From positions 103,540,001 to 103,604,000 of the forward strand of contig NC_043000.1 in the NCBI RefSeq assembly GCF_006345805.1: a DNA stretch of 64,000 nucleotides. The letters are read 5' to 3'. Both the position numbers and the translations under genes were made by a program. Source of the DNA: Octopus sinensis (Eukaryota). Positions 3,988 to 61,133 of this stretch are shown here, one piece after another; the first letter of the stretch is position 1, and each line of letters begins with the position of its first letter. The notes below the pieces were generated by a model. The model was not told where the DNA came from. It saw nothing but the letters and a program-made list of their open reading frames with translations, and did not search any database.

Positions 3988-4183
3988 CTTTACTCTTTTA
4001 CTTGTTCCAGTCATGCTGAAGCACCACCTTTAGTCGATAAAATCGCCCCCCAGGACTTATTCTTTGTAAGCCTAGTACTTATTCTATCAGGCTCTTTTTG
4101 CCGAACCGCTAAGTTACGGGGACAGAGACATACCAGCATCGGTTGTCAAGCGATGGTGGCGGACATAGACACAAACAACAAAC

Positions 4184-4232
<49 letters not shown>

Positions 4233-4407
4233 GATATATATATGACGGACTTCTTTCAGTTTCCATCTACCAAATCCACTCACAAGGCTTTGATCGGCTC
4301 GAGGCTATAGCAAAAGAAACTTGCATAAGGTGTCACACAGTAGGACTGAACCTGGAACCATGTGATTGAGAAGCAAGCTTCTTACCATACAGTCACTCTT
4401 GCGCCTA
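3988..4407 (-). mobile_element. tRNA-derived SINE family 1 (octopus OR-like, family name tentative)
   Basis: Minus-strand tRNA-like head at ~4340-4407, central CCTTGTGAGTGGATTTGGTAG-type block, internal (TA)n and (GAGTAAA)n-like tail; same layout as copies at 8613, 46817 and 56732. Confidence 0.85.
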
Positions 4408-9723: not shown

Positions 9724-10491
9724 ATGAGTTTGCCTAATCTTCCTTCTTTCACTGGTGACGTCACGCTTTGGTTCGCTCAGTTGGAGGCGTATTTTGCGGC
9801 ACACGCTGTACCTTCGCAGCAACAGCTGAATCTTCTCTTCTGTAGCATTCCTGCACCACTCGCTACTTAAGTCAGGGATCTCATCACTGATCCTCGTCCG
9901 GGTGCGACCTACGAGGTAGTCAAATCCGAGGTACTCCGACGGAACACTAAATCCGCGGAGTCTAAGTTTAAGCAGCTTATGCAAGATGAGGAGTGAGGAG
10001 ACAGGACGCCGTCTCAATTTTTAGGGTATCTCCACGAGCTCAGCGACACGACTGAAGACAACTCGCTTTTACGGAAGCTTTTCTTCTCCTGGCAACCTCC
10101 CAATGTGCAAACTATCTTAGCCACAGCGGTTGATACCAACACCGTGGATCAACTAGCTACCATGGCCGATAAGATTTTAGAGTTCGCTATCCAGCCAGCA
10201 CCTCGCCATGTCTACTCTTGCTCAGAGTTTTCCCCCACTGCACCTTCCTCGTCACATGATGATATTGTGGAGAAACTTGCCTCCTTAACACGCCGAATGG
10301 ACGCGCTTTGGGGAGAGCGCTCCAACTCTTCGCGCCGTCGTAGTCGAAGCCGGTCCCGTTCACGCTCGACCGATTCCTCTTCATCTAGTTCCGGTCTTTG
10401 TTGGTACCACGCCAGGTATCAGCATAAAGCCCGCAAATGCATTCAGCCTTGTTCTTTTCAATCGGTGGGAAATGACCTGCGGAGGGCTTGA
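9724..10491 (+). pseudogene. gag: gag, with stops and frameshift
   Basis: LPSFTGDVTLWFAQLEAYF N-terminus; CWYHARYQHKARKCIQPC zinc knuckle. Confidence 0.85.
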
Positions 10492-13400
10492 GTACGTCAA
10501 GCACTTCCGGCTAATTAAAACTCACTCGTACATTTTTTGTGAAGGACCGCGTGTCTGGTGAGGCGTTTATGGTTGACACGGGTTTTAGTTGCTCTATTTG
10601 GCCTTTGTGTCTCACTACAGACAAGCCAAAGCGTTCAGAGATCACCTTGCACGCAGTCAATTGGTCTCTCATTACGACTTATGGTCAAATTTCATTACAT
10701 ATTGACATTAATCTTCGCCGGGATTTTGGGTGGATTTTTGTCATAGCTGATCTCCCACATCCTATTCTGGGTGCGGACATTTTGAACAATTTTAATCTAT
10801 TGGTAGATGTCAGGCGACAGAGATTTGTCGATGGTTCTACGTCCTTGTCTACACCTGCAAAAGCCACTACCAATGCTGTTCTCAGTCCTTCATTTTTTGT
10901 TGTCACTGCTGGTGATACATTTCACTCACTCTTAGCTTCCTTCCTAGAGCTCGTGGATCAGCTATTCCAAATGGCAAAACCTACTCACTCGACCCTCCTC
11001 TATATTACCACCACTGGGCCGCCTGTCTTTTCACGCCCGCGGCGACTTACTCCTGAACGTCTTAAGAAGGCTAGGTCCGAATTTGAGCGTATGCTCCAGC
11101 TTGGCCTTATTCGCCCCTCCACCAGCTCTTGGACATCTCACCTTCATTTGGCACGAAAAGGGGATTCTGATTTTCGCCCGGTGAGGGATTATAGACGTTT
11201 GAATGCGGTCACTGTTCTCGATCGCTATCCCATACGAAATCTCTAAAACTTCTCTAATTTGCATGGTTGTACTATTTTTTCTAAGGTCGACCTCGTTCGT
11301 GCCTATCATCAAATACCAGTCAATCTTGAGGACGTACCAAAAACTGCCATCACTACTCCCTTTGGCAGCTTCGAGTTCCTTTTTATGAGCTTCGGTTTAC
11401 AGAACACCACGAGCACGTTCCAAAGATTTATCGATGAAGTTGTCCGTGGACTTGATTTTGTGTTCGCTTACGTTGATGACATACTCATTGCAAGCGACAC
11501 GCGTGAGAATCACCTCCAATACTTAAATCAACTCTTTCAGCGTCTTCGCGCCTACAATGTGCAAACCAACCCCGGTAAGTGTGTTTTCGGGCAGTCCTAT
11601 CTGGAATTTCTGGGGAATTATATCGACTCAAATGGTATCAGACCTCTCTCTTCCAAAGTCGATGCAATTCAGCGCATCGCACCCCCTACTTTACTACGCC
11701 AACTCTGCCAACACCGCCACTTTTTGGGAGTCGTCAACTTCTACAGACGATAAATTCGTGACTGTGCAGACAAGTTACTTCCCTTGACTCAGCTATTGAA
11801 AGCAAATACAAAAAAGAATTCTATTACTTTATCTGCCGAGGCGTTATCTGCTTTTGTGTCAATCAAGAAAGATATAGCTTCTGTTCCTTTGCTTGCACAT
11901 CCGGTTCCCGATACTCCTTTCTTTTTGACCGTTGATGCATCGGATTCTGCGGTTGGTGCTGTTTTACAGTACACCGGAGACAATCAGACTAAACCTTTAG
12001 CGTTTTTTCTCGTCAATTAAAGCCAGCTGAACGTCGGTACAGTACTTTTGAACGCGAGATACCTGTCAGTTCATCATTTTCAACATCAACTCGAGGGCCG
12101 AGATTTTGTGGTTTATACTGATCACAAGCCTCTTGTGTTTGCTCTGTCATCTAAATCGGACAAACACTCGCCTCGTGCTTTTTGTCACCTGGACTACATT
12201 TCCCAGTTCACGAGTGACATTCGGCACATACCTGGAACAGAGAACATGCCTGCTGACGCAATCTTTCGTCTTCCTGTGTGTTTCCTTTCATCTCCTGCTG
12301 CAATCAATTTAACTGCCATTGCGCAGGATCAGCCAGCTCTGAACACTTTGGATTTAGCTTCTACCAAGTTGTCCTGTTGCAAGTTTGCCTACTTCCCACT
12401 TCCGACTGCTGAAGGCACCATTCTTTGTGACACAGCTACTGGTTCTCCCAGACCGTTTGTACCTGAAAACCACCAGCGCTCCGTTTTTGATGCCTTGCAT
12501 TCACTGTCACATCATGGCGTCGCTGCCTCGGTGAAGCTTATTCCGGCTCGATTTTTATAGCCTAATATGCGCCGGATGATCACCGATTGGTCACACTCTT
12601 GTGTAAAATGCCAGCGTTCTAAAATCCACAGGCATATTCGCGCTCCTCTTGGACAGTTCTCTCCTCCGGGGACTCGCTTTCGCCATGTCCACATTGATCT
12701 GGTTGGACGATAGCCTGTCAGTCGCGGTTTCTCTTACATATTGACATGCGTCGATCGTTTCTTTCGTTGGCCAGAAGCCATTCCAGTAGTGGACATTTCT
12801 GCTGAGTCAGTTGCTCGAGCTTTTGTTTCTAACTGGATTGCTCGCTTTGGTGTCCCAGCTAAAATAACCACTGATCGCTGACGCCAGTTCGAGGCTTTCC
12901 TATTTCGTGAATTATCACAAATCCTAGGAGTTCATTACATTCGTACGACCAGCTACCACCCGGCCTCCAACGGGATGGTCGAACGTTTTCTGAGGCAACT
13001 GAAGGCCGCCCAACTCACCACTTCTGATCCGCAGTCTTGGACAGAATTTCTGCCTATCATTCTTCTTGGTTGTCGCACTGCTGTTGAAGCAGACTTAGGT
13101 TTCTCCTCTGCTGAACTCCTGTACGGTACCACCATGGAGCTCCCTGGTACAATGTTAGCGCCAGACAACTTATCGCCTCCTGATCCAATGTCACCAGACT
13201 TCGCTCGTATTTCTCAAGTCTTCCACCCATCCATCTACGCGACCAGTCTATTCCCTCTCATGTCCTACCAGACATTGACAAATGGACTCATGTTTTTGTT
13301 CGGGATGATTCTGTCAGAGGACTTCTCGTTTCTCCTTATAAGGGACCATTTCGTGTGCTATCGCAACACCCAAAACTTTTAGTCTCGACATCAATGGTCG

Positions 13401-37216: not shown

Positions 37217-37267
37217 GAGGAATATGATTAATCAAATACGTCATTAGTACGGTTTTCTTCAATTGAT
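37217..37267 (-). CDS. 51-nt phase 1-1 exon (QLKKTVLMTYLINHIP)
   Basis: Acceptor ctttttttcattgtaacag, donor gtaagt, open frame. Confidence 0.65.
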
Positions 37268-38416: not shown

Positions 38417-38467
38417 CCGGTGGTTCTTCAGTTGACGAAATGTTCTTGAAGCCGTGGAAAATTAGCT
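38417..38467 (-). CDS. 51-nt phase 1-1 exon (LIFHGFKNISSTEEPP)
   Basis: Acceptor tatattttgcag, donor gtaagt; flanks paralogous to the exon at 47579; only phase 1 is open. Confidence 0.65.
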
Positions 38468-39434: not shown

Positions 39435-39488
39435 ATTGTGTAGTTTCAGAAGTAGCAACGGTACTAACATCCTCGAAGGAAGACGGAG
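39435..39488 (-). CDS. 54-nt phase 1-1 exon (PSSFEDVSTVATSETTQ)
   Basis: Acceptor ctcttttttttcag, donor gtaagt; same tatcaacttac flank as the tandem exons. Confidence 0.7.
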
Positions 39489-39664: not shown

Positions 39665-40723
39665 ATGTACAGAGGTGCCGACGTACATAAGATTAATAAC
39701 TTATGGACCTGGGGTTGCAATCAACACCCAACCCCAAATTCACACCATAGAAAATTTCCCTTTACTGTGAAAAATAACACGGTGAGCAATTCTAAATCTA
39801 CAAAAAACTATATCTGGTTTGTTATACCTTTCGGAAAACAAATCAAATCGAACCTTCCCTTACAGTTCCGTGAAGCAGTGGCTAGGTATTATTCTATTAT
39901 AAATTCACATAAGGTGAGAATTGCATTCTCTAACACTAGAAATCTTTCACAAATTATCGCTTCTCATAATAACAAGCTGCTAAACAGAGATCCTTCACCC
40001 GGAAGATCCAACACTATTTTTATCGATTCCAACCAAACATACAATAATATTAATAGAAATAGTATTGATAGTAGCAACATTCGTAGCAACGTTAGTGTAG
40101 GCAATGATAGTATTAATAATAGCACTAGTCGGGCTGATAATGGTATCAACAACAACATTTCTATTGCCAGGAATATTGCCGGCTGTAATGCTATTAATAT
40201 TAATGATAATAATGATAATAATAATATAAATAATGTACGGGTTAAAACTAACAGTAATATTAACAGCAATCATATCATTAATAATTCAGTCTCAATCTCT
40301 GAAGGAAATCCTAACAGATTAAGGTTCTTGTCCAGTAACTCCAAAATTAAGAATACAATTTACCAATGTAGAATTTCTACCGGTACCGATGTCTTCTTTT
40401 ATATTGGGGCAACAACTTCCAAATTATCAGAGAGAATTTCAAATCATTATTCAACGTTCCGAGATAAGAGAAAACAACAGAGCACAGGACTAAGTAAATT
40501 AGTTTGGCGTCTTAAGGACAATAATATAACTTTTAAGCTGGATTGGTCCATATTGTCTGTATCCTTTCCTTTTGATAAGGGCAGGAAATTTTGCGGAATT
40601 TGTATTTCCGAGCTCTACCATATAATTTTCGCCAAGTTCCATTTAGTTAACACGTTAACAGAAAAATCCTATAAATGTATGCACTGGCAAAAACATACTT
40701 TTCATTCAACAAATGATAATTAA
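39665..40723 (+). CDS. Open 352-codon ORF: C-terminal part of a Naiad-type Penelope element with GIY-YIG endonuclease
   Basis: IWFVIPF..KVRIAFSNTRNL..TIYQ..YIG..ERISNH..STGLSKLVW..CGICISE; no RT upstream. Confidence 0.8.
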   Translation: MYRGADVHKINNLWTWGCNQHPTPNSHHRKFPFTVKNNTVSNSKSTKNYIWFVIPFGKQIKSNLPLQFREAVARYYSIINSHKVRIAFSNTRNLSQIIASHNNKLLNRDPSPGRSNTIFIDSNQTYNNINRNSIDSSNIRSNVSVGNDSINNSTSRADNGINNNISIARNIAGCNAININDNNDNNNINNVRVKTNSNINSNHIINNSVSISEGNPNRLRFLSSNSKIKNTIYQCRISTGTDVFFYIGATTSKLSERISNHYSTFRDKRKQQSTGLSKLVWRLKDNNITFKLDWSILSVSFPFDKGRKFCGICISELYHIIFAKFHLVNTLTEKSYKCMHWQKHTFHSTNDN

Positions 40724-45543: not shown

Positions 45544-45881
45544 TATATATATACATATATAATGTGCTTAATAGCTTCAAAGAAATGCTAAATCTAGCAA
45601 TAATAATGCCATGTTTGTAGCAATGTACGGAAGTATTAGCTCATCCATTTCATAATATATGTACAATGTTACCTCTACATAACTAACTAACTATTTCTTT
45701 AGTTTTGTTAACTTGTTCTACTGAGTTGGAAAGAACGCGCACATTATCAAGTTTCAAAGTATGTATTTATCGCTAATTGAATGTCATCTACGCCAAAGAC
45801 AGTTATTCCTTCAATCAGATACAATTTTCAAGACATTTTAATATGATGGGAACTATTTCAATGATAAAATATATGACTTCA

Positions 45882-45929
45882 TTCCAGATACCGCAGCCGT
45901 AACCACATTATTCAAAAATATCAAAATAT
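45882..45929 (-). pseudogene. 48-nt pseudo-exon (ILIFLNNVVTAAVSG)
   Basis: Flanks paralogous to the exon at 51485; good acceptor, but donor reads tgaagt. Confidence 0.45.
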
Positions 45930-46640
45930 CTACAAGATAAGATATTATATTTATCTTATGTTTAATATCTCTAACTTAAATGTGGAACCTGGGGTTTGTC
46001 AGTGTATGACAATGAAGGAAATTTAACATTCATGATTTATCTCAACATTGTGAAAATCGTATATTTATGAAAATTTTATTATTGTAAATTGTTACATGGT
46101 TGTAAAAACGGAAGTGTTTATCTGGTTTTGATGAAACCAGTTATGATTATGATGATTTTTAGTGTTCCCGCTGAATTAGTCTTTTAATTATGTAATTGTT
46201 CATATGTGATACAAATTGCTATTTCAAATTAATACTGCTTCCGTTGCACATAACGAATTTTATATTCACGTTGTCGTCAACTGCGACATGAGACATTTTT
46301 TAATCCTTAGTTTATCAGTAACTGTAGATTTTGTTTTAGCATGCTATTATCGGTGGACATTTCTACTAACCAAAGTGGGACTGATGTATCGTCTGGAACG
46401 GATGCGTTTTTGCAATTTTTAACACCGTACGTCTACAGAAGATACTCTCTCAGGACGCAATTGCATATATCCATTTTCATACAAAACTTACTCAACTGCC
46501 TCTGTGATAGATTACATTTTTGCGTCAATACATCGTGAATCACACGTATTAATTCAGTTGAACATTTGTGGGATTTTTATTCCCGATCACGTTTGACAAA
46601 TATTCCCGCAAGACTAGTGGGAAGAAGCCACAGTCTACAC

Positions 46641-47352
46641 CAGAGTTTCTCAAACTTTTGGAGCTATCCCCCTCATGGCCACATGATACCCCCTGCGCCC
46701 CCACCCCTAGTTTTATGTATAAACAAATATTTTATATTTTACTAATTTATATATACTATGAATCATTTGATATTTAATATAATATTATATATTTTGTATA
46801 CAATATTATAATAATATAGGTGTAGGAGTGGCTGTGTGGTAAGTAGCTTGCTTACCAACCACATGGTTCCGGGTTCAGTCCCACTGCGTGGCACCTTGGT
46901 CAAGTGTCTTCTACTATAGCTTCGGGTCGACCAAAGCATTGTGAGTGGATTTGGTAGACGGAAACTGAAAGAAACTCGTCGTATATATGTATATATATGT
47001 ATGTTTGTGTGTATATGTTTGTGTGTCTGTGTTTGTCCTCCAAATATCGCGGTTCGGCAAAAGAGGCCAATAGAATAAGTACTAGGCTTACAAAGAATAA
47101 GTTCTGGGGTCGATTTGCTGGACTAGAAGCGGTGCTCTAGCATGGCCACAGTCAAATGACTGAAACAAGTAAAAGAGTAAAGAGTAATACTATCCTAAAT
47201 TCATAGCGTCCCCCAATCCACTGCCGTCCTCCCAACGCCTCCTTTTTCTCTACCACTCCAACCCCTCCACCTCCTTAAGCACCAGCGCCCATCTGGACTG
47301 TTTCAACGCCTACTGAGGGCTGGGGCGGTAGCGCCCACTCTGAGAACCTATG
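46641..47352. mobile_element. hAT/Charlie-like MITE containing a SINE
   Basis: Ends CAGAGTTTCTCA..TGAGAACCTATG; 8-bp TSD GTCTACAC/GTCTACAT. Confidence 0.75.
46817..47186 (+). mobile_element. SINE family 1
   Basis: Full head, central block and tail. Confidence 0.9.
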
Positions 47353-47578: not shown

Positions 47579-47626
47579 CGCGTGGTGGTTCAGTTGGGAT
47601 TATTTTATCGATGTCGAAATATGAAG
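47579..47626 (-). CDS. 48-nt phase 1-1 exon (SYFDIDKIIPTEPPR)
   Basis: Acceptor tatattttgcag, donor gtaagt, open frame. Confidence 0.7.
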
Positions 47627-49129
47627 CTGCAAAATATAGATTTCGTATAATGACAGGCATTTCAATGATTAAATGTTTTTGGATTAAGTTTTTCAGGAGA
47701 GGCAAAGCAGGAAATTAAATGCTTAAAGTTTTCTCTAAATTGAAAGGATCGTCTATTTATTGATAGATTTCTAGCTATATGTTTTCACATATTTGCCGTA
47801 AAATCTAACTTTGTAATCATATCTTCTCAAAACATATCTTCTCGCTTTCTCTTACTCTCTATCTTTCTCTATCTATCTATCTCTCTCCCATTTATAAACA
47901 ACAAAAGATCTTGAGTAAGTTGAGAAAGAAAAATATTTTGAAAGATCAATCATAAATATCAGGCAGTGACAACGGAAAGGTCTGCTTCAAGGCAGACAGC
48001 AAAACACTAACATTTAAAAGGGACAGACGAACTTGCGAGCTGAATAAAAATAAAAAGATATTGGAAACCAAAGTTTGAAGGGATAGAATCTGAGGATAAT
48101 AGAGTCACCATGGCTGGCATTTCTTAACGACGGACAGCAACGTAGTGGCAGCTTAACGGCTGGCGTAACATTCTGAACTTGATGTAAAAGAAAATTCCTA
48201 AACACCAAGTTTAGAAGTGATTCTTTCTCACGACAGTAGACTCACCATGACAAGCATTCAAAACTTCTTCGTCATGGGCGGCAACACATTGACGATTTAA
48301 AGGCTGGCGCAAAGTTTTTAGCTTGATGTAACAGAGAATTCCTAAACACCCGCTCCTGTAAATTTTAATCCCCTTCCAGCCCCATTTAGACCCCTTTTCA
48401 CATTTTGGTTAATATAACCCGATTTCATTCAGGTCAAGGGTAGGGGAGGCAATTAAAAAAAAAACGAAAATAGATAAGAAACAAAGACTAATATATGAAG
48501 AAAAATATATATTAATTAATTCACAAGTAATAGAGAGAGAGAGAAAAAGACCGTATACACATAACACATAAGGAATATATATTAAAACATAAGCACAAAC
48601 ATACATACATACACAACAAAGAACACACATGTGCACATACCCACACACACACACTTACATAAGGGTGCATGTGTAAGGGATGGATACAAACATATAAAAA
48701 ATAACAAAGGAGCACGCATTCACAACAAAAAACGTGTATGTATATATATATATACACACACATTTCCATATACATACACACATACACAGATATATATGTA
48801 TATATATATATATATAATAACAAATTAATGAATAAAACACATGCATATATACATACATATATGTACGTACCTACATCTACATGTATATATACATGCATAT
48901 ATGGGTACAAGACACTAAAAAAAAACGTCGAACACAATGAGAAACGAAAACATAAACACAAAACCAAGGAAATGGACATTTTTCTTAAACAACGAAAAAA
49001 TAGAATACAAGACATACAATACAAGGAAAATTACTCCTCCTCAGCCGCCTCTTTTTCATCTACTCCGCTTTTCGAAGGCAAAGACGAGACACGACTTCAT
49101 TGAAACAATCCTTCCCGTAAAAAGCAAAT

Positions 49130-49139
49130 ATATATACAT

Positions 49140-49196
<57 letters not shown>

Positions 49197-49247
49197 ATAT
49201 ATTATATATATATATACATAATATATATATAATATATATATATACAC

Positions 49248-49344
<97 letters not shown>

Positions 49345-49356
49345 CATATATATATA

Positions 49357-49403
<47 letters not shown>

Positions 49404-49480
49404 ATATACGTATGTATGTATGTATGTATGTATGTGTGTGTGTATGTATTGTGTGTGTGTATGTATGTATATATATGGTT
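49130..49480. repeat. (TA)n/(TATG)n microsatellite
   Basis: Direct observation. Confidence 0.95.
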
Positions 49481-49489
49481 GTATGTATG

Positions 49490-51133
49490 CTGCCTAACAC
49501 AGCTCTTACAGCTACGTGATATACCTCGACTTTGCAAAGGCATCTGATAAAGTAGATGATGGCATGATATATCATAAACTGCGAGACCTTGGCATTGCTG
49601 GTAAACCGGGAGAGTGGCTGCATGACTTTCTTGGAGACAGGTCAGGAAGTTGCTGCCAATGGTGCCCTTTCCGAAGAAAATCAAATCTTAAGGGGCGTCC
49701 CCCAGGGAACTGTTCTGGGGCCATTACTGTTCGTAATAGCCCTCTTAAACATGCCTAAGTTCACTCAGACAACAACTGTCACTAGCAACACCGATGATAA
49801 AAATTTTCACTGGCAATAAAAAATCAAGATGTCGTCGCAAGCTTACAGCGGGACCTGAATTCGATATATAGGTGGGCCGAAGTAAATAACATGTAGTTTA
49901 ATGCTGGAAAATTTCAAGCACTGTACTATCAACTCACAAATGCATTACAGCCTGCATATACAGGACACGAGTGCACTGCAAACCGAGAGTCACAAGCAGT
50001 GAAAAACTTGGGTATCAGTATGTGCAATGATGCATCATTTCATATGCACATTACCAAGACCGTGAGGGCGCGTGGCTTAGTGGTTAGGGCATTCGGCTCA
50101 TGATCGTAAGGTTGTGAGTTCGATTCCCGGCGACGCGTTGTGTCCTTGAGCAAGACACTTTATTTCACGTTGCTCCAGTCCACTCAGCTGGCAAAAATGA
50201 GTTGTACTTGTATTTCAAAGGGTCAGCCTTGTCACTCTCTGTGTCACGCTGATTATCCCCGAGAACTACGTTAAGGGTACACGTGTCTGTGGAATGCTCA
50301 GCCATTTGCACGTTAATTTCACGAGCAAGCTGTTCCGTTGATCGTATCAGCTGGGACCCTCGTCGTCGTAACCGGCGGAGTCTTTTAAACCAAGACCGTA
50401 GTAAAGTGTAGACAACTGGCAGGATGGATACTAAGGTTCTTCAAAACAAGAGGATAAGAAAACTATGTTGAGCCTATGGGGAACCTTTGTTCTCAGCCGC
50501 CTGGAATACTGGCCCTAGTTATGGTCACCACATAGTGCCAAACTAACAGCGGAGCTTGAAGCAGTCCAACGCCACTACACTAAAATGATTGAAACAGCGC
50601 AGCGGATGAGCTACAGCCAAAGGCTGAATAAAATTGCAACTTCACTCCCTGGAGCAAAGGCGCGACAGATGTTTAATAATCTACATATTAAAACCTCGAT
50701 AAGGGCTAGTAACTAATTTCGGCATTGAGTGTTATACAAATGCCAGAACTGGACGCCATTGTATTGTACTAAAGGTACCATTCACTCCATCTAAATTCAG
50801 GACAAAGTACTGCAATAGCCTGGGGTTCAAAGGCCCACAGCTCTTCAATGCCCTTCCATGAAAAATTAAAATTCTGCATAAGGTGGAAGTAAATGTTTTT
50901 AAAAAGGAACTAGACATCCTCCTCTCCACAATACCGGATGAACCAACAGCCCGTCATGAGGTACAGACCAGAGCAGCAGAATCAAACTCTCTTACACACC
51001 AAGTAGGCCAACAGCTGGGACGAAGGCACATACAGGAGTGGTGATGGGAAATACCCCAGACTGAGGAAATCAGCAAGACCACGGTGATGCTCCAGCATGA
51101 TCGCAGCCGCAAAGCTGAAACGACTAAAAGAGT
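49490..51133 (+). mobile_element. 5'-truncated CR1-clade LINE
   Basis: [24 protein letters not shown], degenerate DD motif; 3' tail CTGAAACGACTAAAAGAGTA. Confidence 0.85.
50064..50388 (+). mobile_element. SINE family 3 variant (different tail) inserted in the CR1
   Basis: 11-bp TSD ACCAAGACCGT at 50053-63 and 50389-99. Confidence 0.88.
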
Positions 51134-51484: not shown

Positions 51485-51532
51485 GATCTTTCACCTCAGT
51501 CGAAATAACTTTGTACGCGATTTTCGGAACAT
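51485..51532 (-). CDS. 48-nt phase 1-1 exon (VPKIAYKVISTEVKD)
   Basis: Acceptor tattattttgcag, donor gtaagt, open frame. Confidence 0.7.
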
Positions 51533-52941
51533 CTGCAAAATAATATGTTATAATTTTCTTATAATGTTAATATTTCTTGCGTAAATATGGAAGCTGGGAT
51601 TTGTCACAGTATGACAATGAAGGAAATTTAACATTCATGATTTATCTCAACGTTATGAGAATCGCATATTTATGAAAATTTTATTACTGTAAATTGTTAC
51701 GTGCTTGTCGTAAAAACGAAAGTATTTATCTTGTTTTGATGAATCTGAACTTTCCAATTGTAAGACACATTAAGAATTTAAGCATTTATGGTCCTCGCAA
51801 AATTGTAAGGAACGTATATTTACTGATAGGTTTCTTGCTATAAATTATCGCTAATTTGTACTATAAAAAATAAAATAAAACAATGAGTTATATCTTGGCT
51901 TGCAAAATCAAATAACGAATATTAGGATGATGATTTTCGCATATTGTTACGTGGCTGTCATAAAAACGAAAGTGTTTATCTTGTTCTGATGAAACAAATT
52001 ATGAATATGATGATATTCAGTGTCACCTTTCAATTAATCTTTTATATTATGTATCTATTGACATGTGATACACAAATTGCTATTTCAAACTAATACTGTT
52101 TCCGTTGTACATAACGGATTTTATATTCACGTTGTCGGTCAACTGCGACATCGGTGGTTTTTACAATCATTAGTTTGTTCTATCAGTGACGGCAGAGTTT
52201 GATTTAGCATGTATTTATCAGTGGATACTATCTACTGACCAGACCCAAAGAGGTATTGGTATATCGTCTGGGACTAGTATATCGTATAGTACTGATATAT
52301 TTTTGTGATTTAAAAAAAACGTAAATCTATAAGAAATACTATCTCATAATGAATATGTTTATATACATTTTCATACAAAAATTCACACAACTGCTTCTGC
52401 TGTAAAATAGTGTTTTTCGTCAAACATCATGAAATAGATATATTACTGTGGTAATAATTACTGTTACTATTACTATTCACAGTTATTTCCATCATCTCGC
52501 CGGTCAATCGAAAATGAGGTTTTCGAATAATATTTAAACTGGGTTGATTCCTGATCAGCAAAGTTCACGACTAAAACAACTAATGACGGATACCATACAT
52601 TCGTTCTTAGAAGAGTAAATCCTATTTATGGCCAATCATTTCCAGTCTTCCGTATTAAACAATTTCGTCAGTTCGATGACCAGAATCCCTACAAGTTACT
52701 TCATTTGAACTTTTGTAGGATATCTATTCCCGATCACGTTTCACAATTTTCACGCAAGACTTGTGAAAAGAAGTCAAAGTCTACATGAAGGATAACTTTC
52801 TAGGATACGATAATGACTAATAAATAGATTCGATCTTTAAATATATTTTTGTCTACGCTGTCGGCACTAGTCGTCCTTCTAAAGAGTCACAATTTTAAAA
52901 TAATAACTAATGAAGATGAGAATATCTAAATGTCAACTTAC

Positions 52942-52983
52942 CAGTTGGTTTTTCAAGAAAACCTTTTGCTTGATTCTTATTAT
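52942..52983 (-). CDS. Exon A1, 42 nt (NKNQAKGFLEKPT)
   Basis: tttctttcgattgtag | exon | gtaagt; phase 1-1. Confidence 0.75.
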
Positions 52984-53211
52984 CTACAATCGAAAGAAAT
53001 ATGATTTTTCAGAAAAGAAAATCACAAATCACTTAGCTGATAATTATTAATTTTACTGTTTCTGTTTAGTATAGTAGATGGTTAAATCTATGAAACTGCG
53101 TGGTAATTTTAATTACATTAATATATTAAGCATTCTTTTTAACGATTATGGATGGTAGAAATGGTAAACCACTGGATTTATTCCGAAATGCTAGAATGAA
53201 TATCAACTTAC

Positions 53212-53253
53212 ACCTTACCACCTTACGTGTACCTTTTGTGTATTTCCGAACAT
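53212..53253 (-). CDS. Exon B1, 42 nt (VRKYTKGTRKVVR)
   Basis: tttctttcgaactttag | exon | gtaagt. Confidence 0.7.
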
Positions 53254-53584
53254 CTAAAGTTCGAAAGAAATATTGCAAGACATTAAAAAAAAAAGACATA
53301 GCTAATTATATTTCTGTCTAGGATAATAAATGGTTGAGTCTGGAAAATCATAGGTTATGTAATTACATTTACATTAAACAACCCTTCAAAGACAATGGGT
53401 GGTAAAATTGGTAAAGCGCTATAATGATTCAACTTCCTCTTCTCAAGAGTTTCAGTTCATAACATCTAGTCGGATTCGAAGTACGTATTCGTTAGGAGGT
53501 GTGTGACTATTTTACAAAAGGCATTTGTTGTTGTTTAATGTGATAGAAAATATTTAAATGATTCGTAAATACATATCGACTTAC

Positions 53585-53632
53585 TTTTTGATGCTTCAGT
53601 CGCGAAAGTTTTATTCGAGACGGTTTTAGTAG
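53585..53632 (-). CDS. Exon C1, 48 nt (TKTVSNKTFATEASK)
   Basis: ttatatgttccag | exon | gtaagt. Confidence 0.75.
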
Positions 53633-54928
53633 CTGGAACATATAACATTATTGTTTTGTGATTATGATAAGTATTTCAATGATTTAGTATTTGCTACATG
53701 AATATAGAATCTGAACTTTCCAATTGTAAGACAAATTAAGAAGTTAAGATTTTATGGTCTTTGCAAAATTTTGAGGAACATATATTAACTGATAGGTTTC
53801 TTGCTATAAATTATCGCTAATTTGTACTATGAAAAATAAAATAAAACAATGAGTTATATCTTGCCTTGCAAAATCAAATAACTAATATCAGGATGATGAT
53901 TTTTGCATATTTATGAAAATATTATTACTGTAATTGGTTCGTGGCTGTCATAAAAACAAAAGTGTTTATCTTGTTCTGATGAAACCAATTATGAATATGA
54001 TGATATTCAGTGTCACCTTTCAATTAATCTTTTATATTATGTATCTGTTGACATGTGATACACAGATTGCTATTTCAAACTAATACTGCTTCCGTTGCAC
54101 ATAACGAATTTTATATTCACGTTGTCGGTCAACTGCGACATCGGTGGTTTTACAATCATTAATTTGTTCTATTAGTCACGGCAGAGCTTGGTTTAGCATG
54201 TGATTATCAGTGGATACTTCTACTGACCAGACCTAAAGAGGTACTGGTAGATCGTCTGGGACTAGTATATCGTCTAGCACTGATATATTTTTGTGATTTT
54301 AAAAAACGTATATCTATAAGAAATAGTATTTCGGAATGAATATGTTTATATCCATTTTCATACAAACTTTACTCAACTGCTTCTGCTGTAAAATAGTGCT
54401 TTTCGTCAAACATCATGAAATAGATATATTACTGTGGTAATAATTACTGTCACTGTTACTACTCACAGTTATTTCCATCATCTCGCAGGTCAATCGAAAA
54501 TGAGGTTTTCGAATAATATTTAAACTGGGCTGATTCCTGATCAGCAAGGTTCACGACTAAAACAACTAATGACGGATACCATACATTCGTTCTTAGAAGA
54601 GTAAATCCGATTTTCGGTCAAGCATTTCCAGTCTTCTGTATTAAACAATTTCGTCAGTTCGATAACCAGAATCTGTACAGTTACTTCATTTGAACTTTTG
54701 TAGGATATCTATTCCCGATCACGTTTCACAATTTTCACGCAAGACTTGTGAAAAGAAGTCAATGTCTACATGAAGGATATCTTTCTAGGATACGATAATG
54801 ACTAATAAATAGATTCGATCTTTAAATGTATTTTTGTCTACGCTGTCGGCACTAGTCGTCCTTCTAAACAGTCACAATGTTAAAATAATAACTAATGAAG
54901 ATGAGAATATCTAAAAATATCAACTTAC

Positions 54929-54970
54929 CAGTTGGTTTTTCAAGAGAGTCTTTTGCTTGCTTCTTATTAT
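54929..54970 (-). CDS. Exon A2, 42 nt (NKKQAKDSLEKPT)
   Basis: Consensus sites intact, open frame. Confidence 0.75.
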
Positions 54971-55198
54971 CTACAATCGAAAGAAATATGATTTTTCAGA
55001 AAAGAAAATCACAAATCATTTGGCGAATGATTATTAATTTTACTGTTTCTGTTTAGTATAGTAGATGGTTAAATCTATGAAGCTGCGGGGTTATTTTAAG
55101 TACATTAATATATTAAGCATTCTTTTTAACGATTATGGATGGTAGAAATGGTAAACCACTGGATTTATTCCGAAATGCTAGAATGAATATCAACTTAC

Positions 55199-55240
55199 AT
55201 CTTACCACCTTACGTGTACCTTTTGTGTATTTCCGAACAT
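55199..55240 (-). pseudogene. Exon B2, acceptor lost (AG to CG)
   Basis: Frame open, donor gtaagt, acceptor reads ctgtcg. Confidence 0.65.
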
Positions 55241-55568
55241 CGACAGTTCGAAAGAAATATTGTAAGACATTAAAAAAAAACACACATAACTAATTATATT
55301 TCTGTCTAGGATAATAAATGGTTGAATCTGGAAATCATAGGTTATGTAATTACATTTACATTAAACAACCCTTCAAGGACAATGGGTTGTAAAATTGGTA
55401 AAACGCTATAATGATTCAACTTTCTCTTCTCAAGAGTTTCATTTCATAACATCTAGTCGGATTCGAAGTACGTATTCGTTAGGAGGTGTGTGACTATTTT
55501 ACAAAAGGCATTTGTTGTTTAATGTGATAGAAAATGTTTAAATGATTCGTAAATACATATCGACTTAC

Positions 55569-55616
55569 TTTTTGATTCTTCAGTCGTGAAAGTTTTATTC
55601 GAGACGGTTCTAGTAG
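55569..55616 (-). CDS. Exon C2, 48 nt (TRTVSNKTFTTEESK)
   Basis: Acceptor gttcaag, donor gtaagt. Confidence 0.7.
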
Positions 55617-56731
55617 CTTGAACATATAACATTATTGTTTTTGTGTTAATAATAAATATTTCAATAATTTAGTATTTACTACGTAAATATAGAGTTTGAA
55701 CTTTCCAATTGTAAGACAAATTAAGAATTTAAGACATTATGGTCTTAACAAAATTGTAAGGAACGTATATTTACTGATAGGTTTCTTGCTATAAATTATC
55801 GCTAATTTGTACTATACAAAATAAAATAAACAATGAGTTATATCTTGGCTTGCAAAATCAAATAACGAATATCAGGATGATGATTTTCGCATATTGTTAC
55901 GTGGCTGTCATAAAAACGAAAGTGTTTATCTTGTTCTGATGAAACCAATTATGAATATTATGATATTCAGCGTCACCTTTCAATTAATCTTTTATATTAT
56001 GTATCTATTGAAATGTGATACACAGATTGCTATTTCAAACTAATACTGCTTCCGTTGTACATAACGAATTTTATATTCACGTTGTCGGTCAACTGCGACA
56101 TCGGTGGTTTTACAATCATTTGTTTGTTCTATCAGTAACAGCAGAGCTTGGTATAGCATGTGATTATCTGTGGATACTTCTACTGACCAGACCCAAAGAG
56201 GTACTGGTATATCGTCTGGGACTAGTATATCGTCTTGTACTGATATATTTTTGTGATTTTAAAAAGCGTAAATCTATAAGAAATACTATCTCAGAATGAA
56301 TATGTTTATATCCATTTTCATACAAACTTTACTCAACTGCTTCTGCTGTAAAATAGTATTTTTCGTCAAACATCATGAAATAGATATATTACTGTGGTAA
56401 TAATTACTGTTACTATTACTACTCATAGTTATTTCCATCATCTCACCAGTCAGTCGAAAAGGAGGTTTTCGAATGATATTTAAACTGGGCTGATTCCTGA
56501 TCAGCAAGGTTCACGACTAAAACAACTAACGACGGATACCATACATTCGTTCTTAGAAGTGTAAATCATATTTACGGCCAATCATTTCCAGTCTTCTGTA
56601 TTCAACGATTTCGTCAGTTCGATAACCGGAATCCGTATAGTTACTTAATTTGTACTTTTGTAGGATTTCTATTCCCGATCACGTTTCACAATTTTCACGC
56701 AAGACTTGTGAAAAGTCTACATGAAGGATAT

Positions 56732-57115
56732 ACTCTTTTACTCTTTTACTTCTTTCAGTCATTTGACTGCGGCCGTGCTGGAGCACCGCCTTTAGTCGAG
56801 GAAATCGACCCCGGGACTTATTCTTTGTAAGCCCAGTACTTATTCTATCGGTCTCTTTTGCCGAACCGCTAAGTGACGGGGACATAAACACACCAGCATC
56901 GGATGTGAAGCAATGCTAGGGGGACAAACACAGACACACAAAACACACATGTATATATATATAAATATATACGACAGGCTTCTTTTCAGTTTACCAAATC
57001 CACTCACAAGGGCTATAGCAGAAAACACTTGCCCAAGATGCCACGCAGTGGGACTGAACCCGGACCCATGTGGTTGGTTAGCAAGTTACTTACCACACAG
57101 CCACTCCTGCGCCTA
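56732..57115 (-). mobile_element. SINE family 1 inserted in tandem unit 3
   Basis: Accounts for the ~370-bp extra length of unit 3; absent from the other units. Confidence 0.9.
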
Positions 57116-57262
57116 TCGTTCTAGAATACGATAATGACTAATAAATGGATTCGATCTTTAATTATATTTGTGTCTACGCTGTCGGCACTAGTCGTCCTTC
57201 TAAACAGTCACAATGTTAAAATAATAAATCATGAAGATGAGAATATCTAAATATCAACTTAC

Positions 57263-57304
57263 CAGTTGGTTTTTCAAGAGAATCTTTTGTATTTTTCTTA
57301 TTAT
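57263..57304 (-). CDS. Exon A3, 42 nt (NKKNTKDSLEKPT)
   Basis: Consensus sites intact, open frame. Confidence 0.75.
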
Positions 57305-57533
57305 CTACAATCGAAAGAAATATGATTTTTCAGAAAAGAAAATCACAAATCACTAAGCTAATAATTATTAATTTTACTGTTTCTGTTTAAGAGAGTAGAT
57401 GGTTAAATCTATGAAGCTGTGGGGTTATTTTAATTACATTAATATAATAAGCATTCTTTTTAACGGTTATGGATGGTAGAAATGGTAAACCACTGGACTT
57501 TATTCCGAAATGCTAGAATGAATATCAACTTAC

Positions 57534-57575
57534 ACCTTGCCACTTTACGTGTACCTTTTGTGTATTTCCGAACAT
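57534..57575 (-). CDS. Exon B3, 42 nt (VRKYTKGTRKVAR)
   Basis: Consensus sites intact, open frame. Confidence 0.7.
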
Positions 57576-57933
57576 CTAAAGTTCGAAAGAAATATTGAAA
57601 GACATTAAAAAAAAAACACACATAACTAATTATATTTCTGTCTAAGATAATAAATGGTTGAATCTGGAAAATCATAGGTTATGTAATTACATTAACATTA
57701 AACACTCTTCCACGGACAATGGGTTGTAAAATTGATAAAATGCTGAAATGATTCAACTTTCTCTCCTTAAGTGTTTTATTACATAACATCTAGTCGGATT
57801 CGAAGTACGTATTCGTTAGGAGGTGTGTGACCATTTTACAAGAGGCATTTGTTTCAAAATAGGCGCAAATTACAAGTTGTTGTTTAATGTGATAGAAAAT
57901 ATTTAAATGATTCGTAAATACATATCAACTTAC

Positions 57934-57981
57934 TGTTTGTTGCTTCAGTCGTGAAAGTTTCATTCGAGACGGTTCTAGTAG
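57934..57981 (-). CDS. Exon C3, 48 nt (TRTVSNETFTTEATN)
   Basis: Consensus sites intact, open frame. Confidence 0.75.
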
Positions 57982-59289
57982 CTGGAACATATAACATTAT
58001 TGTTTTGTGTTAATAATAAATATTTCAATAATTTAGTATTTACTACGTAAATATAGAGTTTGAACTTTCCAATTGTAAGACAAATTAAGAATTTAAGACA
58101 TTATGGTCTTATCAAAATTGTAAGGAACATATAGTTACTGATAGGTTTCTTGCTATAAATTATCGCTAATTTGTACTATAAAAAATGAAATAAAACAATG
58201 AGTTATATCTTGCCGTGCAAAATCAAAAAACCAATATTAGGATAATGATTTTCGCCTATTTATGAAAATATTATTACTGTAAATTGTTACGTGGTTGTCG
58301 TAAAAACGAAAGCGTTTATCTTGTTTTGATGAAACCAATTATGAATATGATGATATTCAGTGTCACGTTTCAATTCATCTTTTATATTATGTATCTGTTG
58401 ACATGTGATACACAGATTGCTATTTCAAACTAATACTGCTTCCGTTGCACATAACGAATTTTATATTCATGTTGTCGGTCAACTGCGACATCGGTGGTTT
58501 TTACAAACATTAGTTTGTTCTATCAGTAACGGCAGAGTTTGGTTTAGCATGTGATTATCAGTGGATACTTCTACTGACCAGACCTAAAGAGGTACTGGTA
58601 TATCGTCTGGGACTAGTATATCATCTAGTACTGATATATTTTTGTGATTTTAAAAATCCTAAAATCTACAAGAAATACTATCTCAGATTGAATATGCTTA
58701 TATACATTTTCATAGAAAATTTACACAACTGCTTCTGCTGTAAAATAGTGTTTTGCGACAACACCATGAAATAGATATATTACTGCGGTAATAATTACTG
58801 TTACTATTACTACTCACAGTTATTTCCATCATCTCACCAGTCAATCGAAAATGAGGTTTCCGAATGATATTTAAACTGGGCTGATTCCTGATCAGCAAGG
58901 TTCACGACTAAAACAACTAATGACGGATACCATACATTCGTTCTTAGAAGAGTAAATCCGATTTTCGGTCAAGCATTTCCAGTCTTCTGTATTAAACAAT
59001 TTCGTCAGTTCGATAACCAGAATCTGTACAGTTACTTCATTTGAACTTTTGTAGGATATCTATTCCCGATCACGTTTCACAATTTTCACGCAAGACTTGT
59101 GAAAAGAAGTCAAAGTCTACATGAAAGATATCTTTCTAGGATACGATAATGACTAATAAATGTATTCGATCTTTAATTATATTTCTGTCTTCGCTGTAGT
59201 CGTCCACCTATGTAACTTGTCTTCTTCTAAAGAGTCACAATGTTAAAATAATAACTAATGAAGATGAGAATATCTTAATATCAACTTAC

Positions 59290-59331
59290 CAGTTGGTTTT
59301 TCAAGAGAATCTTTTGTATTTATCTTATTAT
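59290..59331 (-). CDS. Exon A4, 42 nt (NKINTKDSLEKPT)
   Basis: Consensus sites intact, open frame. Confidence 0.75.
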
Positions 59332-59560
59332 CTACAATCGAAGGAAATATGATTTTTCAGAAAAGAAAATCACAAATCACTTAGCTAATAATTATTAATT
59401 TTACTGTTTCTGTTTAGGATAGTAGATGGTTAAATCTATGAAGCTGCGGGGTTATTTTAATTACATTAATATATTAATTATTCTTTTTAACGATTATGGA
59501 TGGTAGAAATGGTAAACCACTGGACTTTATTCCGAAATGCTAGAATGAATATCAACTTAC

Positions 59561-59602
59561 ACCTTGCCACATTACGTGTATCTTTTGTATATTTCCGAAT
59601 AT
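59561..59602 (-). pseudogene. Exon B4, acceptor lost (AG to CG)
   Basis: Frame open (IRKYTKDTRNVAR), same acceptor change as B2. Confidence 0.65.
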
Positions 59603-59954
59603 CGACAGTTCGAAAGAAATATTGTAAGACATTAAAAAATAACACACACACATAACTAATTATGTTTCTTCCTAGGATAATAAATGGTTGAATCTGGAAA
59701 ATCATTGCTTATTTAATATTAAACATCCTTTCAAGGACAATGGGTGGTAAAATTGGTAAAACGCTGTAATGGTTCAACTTTCTCTCCTTGAGAGTTTCAT
59801 TTCATAGCATCTAGTCAGATTCGAAGTACGTATTCGTTAGCTAGTGTATGACCATTTTACAAGAGGCATTTGTCTCAAAATAGGCGCAAATTACAAGTTG
59901 TTGTTTAATGTGATAGAAAATATTTAAATGATTGGTAAATACATATCCACTTAC

Positions 59955-60002
59955 TGTTTGTTGCTTCAGTCGTGGAAGTTTTATTCGAGACGGTTCTAGT
60001 AG
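59955..60002 (-). CDS. Exon C4, 48 nt (TRTVSNKTSTTEATN)
   Basis: Consensus sites intact, open frame. Confidence 0.75.
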
Positions 60003-60204
60003 CTGGAACATATAACATTATTGTTTTGTGATAATGATAATTATTTCAATGATTTATTATTTAGTACATGAATATATTGTCTGAACTTTCCAATTGTAAG
60101 ACAAGTTAAGAATTTAAGTATTTATGGTCTTCGCAAAATTGTAAGGAACATATATTTACTGATAGGTTTCTTGCTATAAATTATCGCTAATTTGTTCTAT
60201 AAAA

Positions 60205-60606
60205 TCTTTATATATAAAAGTGAAGTTGTGTATCTGTCTCCTACGACTTAGATTCCTAACTACTCCCACATTTTGCGGTGCAGTTTAACCAAAAGCAGGT
60301 GTCTTATAGTCGTGATTCATATCGAGCCCTTCTGGGTATTAGCGCGCGTCTACGATAAGTCTACGATTTTAAAAATAATTTACCATCATTTTTTCCCCAT
60401 TTTTAACGCATTTTTTTCGCTATTATATAAGGAAAGTAACTCTCTAAAAATGTCTACGATGAGTCAACGATTAAAAAAAAAATTTACCATCATTTTCTTT
60501 CCATTTTTAATGCATTTTTTTTGCTATTTTTTGGCTATAACTCTCTAAAAATGCTTACATAGTTATTTCCCATACAAACCCGAGCAACGCCGGGCGATAC
60601 TGCTAG
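60205..60606 (+). mobile_element. Non-autonomous Helitron
   Basis: 5' TC, 3' CTAG, subterminal hairpin CCCG-AGCAACGC-CGGG, inserted at A|T in the tandem unit, no TSD. Confidence 0.85.
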
Positions 60607-61085
60607 TATAAAATAAAACAATGAGTTATATCTTGCCTTGCAAAATCAAATAACGAATATTAGGATGATGATTTGGAAGAAATGGCATCAAGGTCTGATA
60701 GTGTTTAGTGCTGCCTGAAATTAATCGTATTTTACTCTCATTATCCCTTCCATAAACAACGTACAAATATTATTCAATGGTTGATTCTGTCAGCTACGTT
60801 GAGGTAACCAAAATTAAGAGGAAGTGTTCACTGTTGGATAAGCCCGTTGTAGTTCGGGCTTCCGCCGCTAGAAACCACTTGATGCAACCCTCGGGCATCA
60901 GTCTGCCGACCGACGTCGTCAAGTAAAGTCGTACTGACACGTGGTGCGTCTTTGTTTTGCAGTGCTTCTCCGTAGAGAATCACAGAGGTGGGGGGGGGGG
61001 ACAGAGATCGAATAAACTACATTGGTGAAACCAACATAACATTCAAGACACAAGACACTCAACGAAATGTACATGTTTATCAACA

Positions 61086-61133
61086 TGCTTGCTGCTTCAA
61101 TTGTGTCAGTTGTATTCAAGATAGTCTCAGTAG
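61086..61133 (-). pseudogene. Diverged exon-C paralog (TETILNTTDTIEAAS), donor damaged
   Basis: Acceptor ttatatcttccag homologous to exon C; 48 nt open; gtaagt replaced. Confidence 0.5.

What the first reader, a model, noticed from the sequence alone, without database searches (positions are those of the whole stretch)
51590..60670. 2-kb exon cassette amplified four times with alternating exon-B silencing and mosaic higher-order structure
Seen: units 2 and 4 share the same acceptor-killing change before exon B (AG to CG), while units 1 and 3 keep it. Units 1/3 and 2/4 also share intronic variants (a ~20-bp indel near ttttcgcatat; cct/cat-attta vs ccgattttcgg), an ABAB pattern. Distal parts group differently: units 3+4 share an aaaataggcgcaaattacaag insert and units 2+3 share gagtttgaac. 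Inference: a dimer duplication followed by unequal crossover or conversion yields protein repeats alternating C-A and C-B-A, probably with copy-number polymorphism.
Basis: partly seen in the sequence, partly recalled or inferred. Interest (0 to 1): 0.7.

Follow-up and report, generated by a model that had tools for sequence, protein, structure and literature searches.

The report
Amplified mini-exon cassette in octopus gene
A 2-kb block carrying three tiny exons has been copied four times inside an octopus-specific gene for a repetitive protein that is probably secreted; it is a real but ordinary example of a gene growing by internal duplication, and the "alternating silenced exon" pattern comes from small copy-and-paste events between the units, not from a designed periodicity.

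Summary
Window 51662-60674 holds four full tandem units of about 2 kb plus one internally deleted unit. Each full unit carries three minus-strand mini-exons: C (48 nt), B (42 nt) and A (42 nt). All are phase 1-1, open in one frame, with GTAAGT donors. The exon B acceptor is AG in units 1 and 3 and CG in units 2 and 4.

The spliced peptide hits one protein, an Octopus vulgaris "hypothetical predicted protein" of 246 aa. Its model uses every A exon, one C exon, the flanking exon Z and three 3' mini-exons also present in the window. It uses no B exon.

That reference locus is 97-99% identical to the window but has five units. Four of its five B acceptors are CG. The ortholog of window unit 3 has CG between identical flanks, so the ABAB acceptor pattern reflects a conversion tract of about 50 bp or less, not an ancestral dimer. 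Alternate units are not closer overall than adjacent ones.

No selection signal, homolog, Pfam domain or Rfam family was found.

Verdict: a multi-exon intragenic tandem amplification evolving by unequal exchange and short-tract conversion. Exon B is probably a decaying paralog of exon A. This is a new member of a known kind, of modest interest.

The parts
51662..60674 (-). Whole tandem array: U0 (internally deleted) plus U1-U4. Each unit runs from TCGCATAT... to ...GGATGATGATTT on the + strand. The gene is read on the minus strand.
51662..51936 (-). U0: a unit lacking about 1.7 kb, including exons A, B and C. It keeps the first ~82 bp and last ~195 bp of a unit. It is also present in the O. 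vulgaris locus.
51937..53902 (-). Unit U1. Exons A1 52942-52983, B1 53212-53253 (acceptor AG), C1 53585-53632. Ortholog V1 (0.93% divergence).
53903..55886 (-). Unit U2. Exons A2 54929-54970, B2 55199-55240 (acceptor CG), C2 55569-55616 (acceptor cAAG). Ortholog V2 (1.24%).
55887..58251 (-). Unit U3. Exons A3 57263-57304, B3 57534-57575 (acceptor AG; CG in ortholog V3), C3 57934-57981. Ortholog V3 (1.44%).
58252..60674 (-). Unit U4. Exons A4 59290-59331, B4 59561-59602 (acceptor CG), C4 59955-60002. Ortholog V5 (2.99%). Carries a ~200-bp U2-type conversion patch around 58930-59060.
56731..57114 (.). Dispersed SINE-like repeat inserted in U3. Shared with V3, so it marks orthology. It has not spread to other units.
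60205..60607 (.). 0.4-kb insertion in U4 flanked by TATAAAAT, containing a 104-bp x2 tandem. Shared with V5.
51485..51532 (-). Exon Z (48 nt, phase 1-1; VPKIAYKVISTEVKD), immediately downstream of the array in the transcript. Present in the annotated protein.
47579..47626 (-). 3' mini-exon (48 nt, phase 1-1; SYFDIDKIIPTEPPR) of the same gene.
38417..38467 (-). 3' mini-exon (51 nt; LIFHGFKNISSTEEPP), a paralog of the previous one including its upstream intron.
37217..37267 (-). 3' mini-exon (51 nt; QLKKTVLMTYLINHIP).

Best explanation
The region is part of a lineage-restricted Octopus gene, read on the minus strand. The gene is built almost entirely of 42-54-nt symmetric (phase 1-1) mini-exons. 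It encodes a Lys/Thr/Glu/Asn-rich repetitive protein that is probably secreted.

A 2-kb genomic cassette holding three such exons (C, B, A) was amplified in tandem. Within it, B is an old paralog of A. The amplification happened well before the two available genomes diverged: paralogs differ by 6-8.5%, orthologs by 1-3%.

Since then the array has evolved by unit gain or loss (4 units here, 5 in the O. vulgaris reference) and by short-tract gene conversion between units. Together these produce the mosaic.

Because every exon is phase 1-1 and a multiple of 3 nt long, any copy number and any pattern of exon skipping keeps the reading frame.

Exon B is most likely a decaying or at best rarely used exon. 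Its acceptor AG is lost in 6 of the 9 units examined, and it is absent from the only annotated transcript. The alternating AG/CG pattern in this window is a by-product of one micro-conversion (about 50 bp or less) at unit 3 or its ortholog.

Shown: array anatomy, exon-like properties, orthology, the copy-number difference and the conversion tracts. Inferred: secretion, actual splicing, and the non-use of exon B.
For: Anatomy and variants.

Exon properties: all 13 candidate exons are open in one frame, with consensus donors. The 3' exons have the same design.

Protein match: P0001 contains the A, C and Z peptides and the 3' exons found in the window at 47.6, 38.4 and 37.2 kb. The annotation pipeline used Iso-Seq, RNA-seq, PASA and EVM (PMC10700109).

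The O. vulgaris reference locus: five units there, with B acceptors CG x4 and AG x1.

Orthology: U1=V1, U2=V2, U3=V3, U4=V5, with private insertions shared by U3/V3 and U4/V5.

Conversion: U3 and V3 differ in the exon B region at just the two acceptor positions, between identical flanks. U4 carries a U2/V2/V4-type patch that V5 lacks. An AAA>AGA change in exon C is shared by U2, U3 and U4 and is absent from all five V units.

A/B paralogy extends into the introns: alignment score 63 against a shuffle maximum of 33.
Against: There is no direct transcript evidence here. One automated gene model is the only support, and spliced aligners are unreliable inside arrays of near-identical 42-nt exons.

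The exons are no better conserved than the introns among the 9 units: A 10/42, B 7/42 and C 9/48 variable sites, against 15.2% outside exons. Exon changes fit neutrality, with A+C at 15 nonsynonymous to 4 synonymous. Selection therefore does not vouch for coding.

No homolog of the repeat or C-terminal part exists in 5.8 billion or 1.84 billion protein sets.

The 4-versus-5 difference could be an assembly error in either genome.

The extra unit V4 resembles V2 yet is separated from it by V3. A single one-unit unequal crossover does not explain this.
Confidence: 0.65

Rival explanations
1. An ancestral dimer (a B-competent unit plus a B-silent unit) was duplicated. The protein therefore alternates C-B-A and C-A blocks as a higher-order periodicity.
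For: In this window the acceptor state, a 25-bp indel and a 15-bp variant patch all follow ABAB. The 25-bp indel also alternates in V1-V4 of the O. vulgaris reference locus. V4 is nearly identical to V2, two units away.
Against: Alternate units are not closer overall than adjacent ones. Only 11 of 44 informative sites support 13|24, and they sit in short clusters. V3 has CG where U3 has AG, and V5 lacks U4's patch. The O. vulgaris reference locus reads AG, CG, CG, CG, CG. The annotated protein contains no B exon.
Confidence: 0.1
2. Exon B is a genuine, regulated cassette exon wherever its AG is intact. Conversion-driven switching of the acceptor creates heritable isoform differences between haplotypes.
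For: B is open in the shared frame in all 9 copies and is the only exon type open in just that frame. It has a consensus donor and, where AG is kept, a good pyrimidine tract. The longest stretch invariant in all 9 units (67 bp; 95% of simulated arrays gave 50 bp or less) covers the B donor and the intron after it.
Against: B is absent from the only model, even for V1, which has an intact AG. Six of 9 acceptors are dead. The B peptide (VRKYTKGTRKVVR) is compositionally unlike the rest of the protein. There is no signal of constraint.
Confidence: 0.15
3. The array is a non-coding intronic or intergenic macrosatellite, and the exon-like features and gene model are spurious.
For: No purifying selection on the exons. 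The protein is an orphan with no domain. The annotated first exon belongs to a separate short-ORF family, which hints at a chimeric model.
Against: All 13 exon candidates are multiples of 3 nt, in the same phase and open in one frame, with GTAAGT donors. The same design continues in three non-repeated 3' exons. A 13-exon open model was produced by an evidence-weighted pipeline.
Confidence: 0.07
4. The array or its copy number is an assembly artefact.
For: Arrays of 2-kb units at 92-94% identity can be mis-assembled. V2 and V4 differ by only 1.6%.
Against: Two independent assemblies share units in the same order, with unit-specific insertions and private substitutions. The window has no gaps. 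Paralogs are 6-8% diverged, which long reads resolve easily.
Confidence: 0.05

Closest known systems
Human LPA kringle IV type 2 repeat (5.5-kb, two-exon coding copy-number polymorphism; PMC4378929, PMC11515395)
   Same: A head-to-tail genomic unit that contains whole exons and their introns. Copy number changes protein length in frame. Units are homogenised by exchange between copies.
   Different: LPA units encode a folded kringle domain, are nearly identical, and range up to tens of copies with proven population polymorphism. Here there are three mini-exons of 14-16 codons encoding low-complexity sequence, units are 6-8% diverged, and only 4 versus 5 copies have been seen, in two assemblies of unknown relationship.
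Haptoglobin Hp2 allele (1.7-kb intragenic duplication of two exons) - from general knowledge
   Same: An intragenic multi-exon tandem duplication produced by unequal exchange that lengthens a secreted protein.
   Different: That is a single duplication with a known functional consequence. Here the amplification is multi-copy and there are no functional data.
Titin PEVK and nebulin super-repeat exon arrays - from general knowledge
   Same: Long runs of short symmetric exons that arose by repeated segmental duplication. They are extensively and variably skipped, and encode disordered repeats.
   Different: Those are large, conserved muscle proteins with clear homologs. This gene is a small orphan. 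No sequence similarity was found.
Phase 1-1 module amplification in extracellular proteins (Patthy's exon-shuffling rule) - from general knowledge
   Same: All exons are phase 1-1, and a signal-peptide-like segment precedes them in the O. vulgaris model. Duplication or skipping therefore keeps the frame.
   Different: The modules here are 14-17-residue peptides, not autonomous folded domains.

Membership tests
Intragenic multi-exon tandem repeat (coding VNTR, LPA KIV-2 type) | Head-to-tail genomic units, each containing complete exons with their introns | tested here: met
   Four full units, each with C, B and A candidates and their splice signals.
Intragenic multi-exon tandem repeat (coding VNTR, LPA KIV-2 type) | The exon set of a unit is a multiple of 3 nt with matching phases, so copy number changes stay in frame | tested here: met
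   48+42+42 = 132 nt, or 90 nt without B. All exons are phase 1-1 and the concatenate is open.
Intragenic multi-exon tandem repeat (coding VNTR, LPA KIV-2 type) | The unit's exons are present in mature mRNA or protein | tested here: inconclusive
   The annotated O. vulgaris protein P0001 has five A exons and one C exon. Transcript reads could not be inspected, and B is never included.
Intragenic multi-exon tandem repeat (coding VNTR, LPA KIV-2 type) | Copy number varies among haplotypes or individuals | tested here: inconclusive
   4 units in the window against 5 in GCA_951406725.2. It is unknown whether the window is the same species, and neither count is validated by reads.
Dimeric higher-order repeat | Units two apart are more alike than adjacent units across the unit | tested here: not met
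   U1-U3 7.7% and U2-U4 7.5%, against U1-U2 5.8% and U2-U3 6.8%. 13|24 is supported at 11 of 44 informative sites, in clusters.
Concerted evolution by gene conversion in tandem arrays | Short tracts where a unit matches a paralog instead of its ortholog; lineage-specific variants shared by several units | tested here: met
   The U4 patch matches V2/V4 (1 difference) rather than V5 (7 differences). The U3 and V3 acceptors differ between identical flanks. An exon C AGA codon occurs in U2, U3 and U4 and in no V unit.
Known protein or RNA families | Significant match to a Pfam domain, Rfam family or any homologous protein | tested here: not met
   Pfam has nothing above its cut-offs. Rfam has nothing in the array. 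Protein searches return only P0001 itself for the repeat and C-terminal part.

The most novel reading that the evidence does not exclude
The exon B acceptor is a conversion-mobile on/off switch. Micro-conversion between units toggles AG and CG, so different haplotypes encode secreted proteins with different numbers and positions of a basic B insert. The unusually invariant 67 bp at the B donor would then reflect selection to keep B splice-competent.
Probability: 0.1. Interest if true: 0.5.

Novelty: new member of a known kind. Interest (0 to 1): 0.3.

Why it matters
It is a clean, small example of how an orphan repeat-protein gene grows: nested duplication of phase 1-1 mini-exons, then concerted evolution. 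Two assemblies allow individual conversion tracts to be seen, including one that flips a splice acceptor.

It is useful as a caution for annotation of cephalopod genomes. Arrays of 42-nt exons are easily mis-modelled. Patterns seen in a single haplotype, such as ABAB, need not be ancestral.

It does not open a new mechanism or bear on a long-standing question.

Tried and rejected
- Plus-strand reading: there are no ORFs or splice-like structure there. The candidate exons are on the minus strand.
- Selection tests: exon versus intron variability and Nei-Gojobori counts gave no signal either way, because there are too few sites.
- Homology: two word-indexed searches and one exhaustive phmmer search found no relatives of the repeat or C-terminal part. 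P0002 is a low-complexity coincidence. P0003-P0006 match only the annotated first exon, which lies outside the window.
- Pfam and Rfam at a permissive threshold found nothing in the array. The sub-threshold miRNA-like hits at 48.7-49.4 kb lie in (TA)n microsatellite and are treated as chance.
- ARAGORN found no tRNA-like head in the U3 insert. It is called SINE-like only because it is a ~0.4-kb dispersed repeat with other copies in the window.
- I tried to explain V4 (nearly V2) and the 4-versus-5 difference by one unequal crossover. No single event fits, so the history is left unresolved.
- U4 as a V4/V5 recombinant was rejected. Only a ~200-bp patch is V2/V4-like.
- Literature search for tandem exon duplication in octopus found nothing relevant.
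Full report
**1. The observation**

Direct-repeat and BLAST self-comparison show a ~2-kb unit repeated head to tail between about 51.66 and 60.67 kb. Unit edges are sharp. Every unit starts TCGCATAT... and ends ...GGATGATGATTT, and the last unit abuts unique sequence at 60675.

The units are:

| Unit | Coordinates | Notes |
|---|---|---|
| U0 | 51662-51936 | Keeps only the first ~82 and last ~195 bp of a unit |
| U1 | 51937-53902 | |
| U2 | 53903-55886 | |
| U3 | 55887-58251 | Carries a 384-bp dispersed repeat at 56731-57114 |
| U4 | 58252-60674 | Carries a 0.4-kb insertion at 60205-60607 |

These are the 25-bp indel (U1/U3 lack it), the CCGATTTTCGG patch (U2/U4), the AAAATAGGCGCAAATTACAAG insert (U3/U4) and GAGTTTGAAC (U2/U3). 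The window has no N.

**2. Strand and exon-like blocks**

The plus strand has no meaningful ORFs. On the minus strand each unit holds three short blocks with consensus donors GTAAGT(T/C)GATAT. These are C (48 nt), B (42 nt) and A (42 nt). A fourth block, Z (48 nt, 51485-51532), lies just downstream of the array.

All 13 blocks are multiples of 3 nt. All need the same phase (2 nt completing a codon, 1 nt starting the next, that is phase 1-1). All are open in that frame. Ten of the twelve array blocks have an AG acceptor. B2 and B4 read ctgTCG where B1 and B3 read cttTAG.

A and B are old paralogs. Similarity extends into their upstream introns, at 72% over 122 bp, with a score of 63 against a shuffle maximum of 33.

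**3. Is it a gene?**

The conceptual peptide gave a single database hit, P0001. This is a 246-aa "Hypothetical predicted protein [Octopus vulgaris]".

Its sequence reads:

...NNNTINTKDSLEKPT / DNKKQAKDSLEKPT / ATKTVSNETSTTEATN / NNKKNTKDSLEKPT / DNKKQAKDSLEKPT / ENKKQAKGFLEKPT / DVPKIAYKVISTEVKD / PSYFDIDKIIPTEPPR / ELIFHGFKNISSTEEPP / DQLKKTVLMTYLINHIPLS

In exon terms this is A, A, C, A, A, A, Z followed by three further exons. Those three are found in the window at 47579-47626, 38417-38467 and 37217-37267. They are again 48-51-nt phase 1-1 mini-exons with GTAAGTT donors.

The model contains no B peptide.

According to the genome paper, models were built with EVM/PASA from Iso-Seq, RNA-seq, protein and ab initio evidence (PMC10700109). 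The model is therefore plausible. I could not inspect its reads, and exon choice inside an array of near-identical 42-nt exons is error-prone.

P0001 has no Pfam domain. It has no relatives for its repeat or C-terminal part in either protein collection.

An internal MHLLILFQVILIAGITWS|QQ segment looks like a signal peptide. This is an inference from the -3,-1 rule and was not tested. The annotated first exon has its own family of short ORFs, P0003-P0006, so the 5' end of the model may be chimeric. Both of those features lie outside the window.

**4. Comparison with the O. vulgaris reference locus**

L001 is OX597817.1:66886316-66982084. It is 97-99% identical to the window on the opposite strand. 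The window therefore comes from another individual or a sister species.

L001 has five full units, V1-V5, plus the same U0 and Z.

Segment-wise distances give clear orthology:

| Window unit | Ortholog | Divergence | Shared marker |
|---|---|---|---|
| U1 | V1 | 0.93% | |
| U2 | V2 | 1.24% | |
| U3 | V3 | 1.44% | SINE-like insert |
| U4 | V5 | 2.99% | 0.4-kb insert |

V4 is an extra unit 1.6% from V2. Paralogs within the window differ by 5.8-8.5%. The amplification therefore long predates the split of the two genomes.

**5. What the ABAB pattern is**

In L001 the B acceptors read AG (V1), then CG, CG, CG, CG. U3 and V3 are identical across the whole exon B region except for the two acceptor positions, and the flanking unit-3-specific markers are retained. 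One lineage therefore underwent a micro-conversion of about 50 bp or less. The direction cannot be set without an outgroup.

The U2=U4 patch shows 2 differences in 199 bp. It matches V2/V4 (1 difference) and not V5 (7 differences). It is therefore a recent ~200-bp conversion in the window lineage.

Only the 25-bp indel alternates in both assemblies.

Alternate units are not globally closer than neighbours. Informative sites split 20/11/13 among the three partitions, in clusters.

A further sign of concerted evolution is an exon C AAA>AGA change. It is present in U2, U3 and U4 but in none of the five V units.

The mosaic is thus real. It is best read as repeated short-tract conversion plus at least one unit gain or loss, not as a duplicated dimer. 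The origin of V4 is not explained by a single one-unit crossover, because V4 resembles V2 but is separated from it by V3.

**6. Status of exon B**

For:
- It is open in all 9 copies, and in only that frame.
- It has a consensus donor.
- It has a good pyrimidine tract where AG is intact.
- The longest stretch invariant across all nine units (67 bp; 95% of simulated arrays gave 50 bp or less) covers its donor and the adjoining intron.

Against:
- Six of 9 acceptors are CG.
- It is absent from the only model, even for V1.
- Its very basic peptide is unlike the rest of the protein.
- B2 has no in-frame alternative acceptor. B4 has only one, at 59672, which would add an unrelated hydrophobic peptide.

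I rate B a decaying or rarely used exon.

**7. Selection**

Among the nine units, variable sites are A 10/42, B 7/42 and C 9/48, against 15.2% outside exons. A+C changes are about 15 nonsynonymous to 4 synonymous, near the neutral ratio. This neither supports nor refutes coding. It fits a fast-evolving disordered repeat.

**8. Wider locus**

The region has duplicated before:
- 45560-46539 is a 74-79% copy of "Z flank + unit start". It runs uninterrupted across the point where U0 is deleted, and its Z-like exon has decayed.
- A C-like block with an intact acceptor but no donor lies at 61086-61133.
- An unannotated 54-nt phase 1-1 block with the family donor lies at 39435-39488.

No Rfam family explains the array.

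**9. Verdict**

The array is a genuine multi-exon intragenic tandem amplification in an orphan octopus gene for a repetitive protein that is probably secreted. It evolves by unequal exchange and gene conversion. In kind it resembles LPA KIV-2 (PMC4378929, PMC11515395), haptoglobin Hp2 and the PEVK/nebulin exon arrays.

Its dimer and alternating-protein inference is not supported. This is a new member of a known kind, of modest interest.

Noticed in passing
window 45560-46539: An older (74-79% identical) duplicate of the segment 'exon Z flank + first ~500 bp of the unit'. It lies in a downstream intron of the same gene. It is continuous where U0 has its internal deletion. Its Z-like exon is the most diverged part and lacks a GT donor.
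   Followed up: partly
window 61086-61133 (minus strand): A relic of a C-type exon just upstream of the array. The acceptor cttccAG is intact and the frame is open (TETILNTTDTIEAAS), but the GTAAGT donor is gone. It is not in the annotated protein.
   Followed up: partly
window 39435-39488 (minus strand); L001 about 81857-81910: An unannotated 54-nt phase 1-1 block (PSSFEDVSTVATSETTQ) with a strong acceptor and the family-typical donor GTAAGTTGATAT. It lies between two annotated 3' exons and may be a cassette exon.
   Followed up: no
window 55133-55199 and the equivalent positions in the other units: The longest stretch invariant in all nine units from the two assemblies (67 bp; 95% of simulated arrays gave 50 bp or less). 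It covers the exon B donor and the first ~60 nt of the following intron. It could be a splicing element or simple homogenisation.
   Followed up: no
L001 10001-10171 and 38317-38400 (outside the window): The first annotated exon of P0001 has its own family of 60-84-aa ORFs (P0003-P0006, about 50% identity). The second exon contains an internal Met followed by a signal-peptide-like segment. The annotated 5' end may therefore be chimeric, and the true protein may start at MHLLILF...
   Followed up: partly
window 3989-4406, 8621-9029, 46818-47186, 56731-57114: Four copies (72-87% identical) of a ~0.4-kb dispersed SINE-like repeat with an internal (TG/TA)n stretch. ARAGORN calls no tRNA-like head in the copy tested.
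   Followed up: partly
window about 10100-13400 (+ strand): A run of ORFs from a degraded LTR-type retroelement. RVT_1 is at 11259-11753 (E 7e-25) and RT_RNaseH at 12048-12560 (E 7e-6). Part of it (11821-12791) has an 86% identical copy within L001; the element lies outside the stretch of the window that aligns colinearly with L001.
   Followed up: partly
window 39665-40723 (+ strand): A 352-aa ATG-initiated ORF, Asn/Ser-rich in the middle, with no Pfam hit. It lies inside an intron of the mini-exon gene on the opposite strand.
   Followed up: no
window 48730-49490 and many other sites (3.4-6.8 kb, 15.6-16.2 kb, 19.7-20.2 kb, 44.0-44.3 kb): Long (TA)n/(TATG)n microsatellites. They give spurious long 'YIYIYI' ORFs and sub-threshold miRNA-family hits (30-40 bits against gathering scores of 81-100).
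   Followed up: yes
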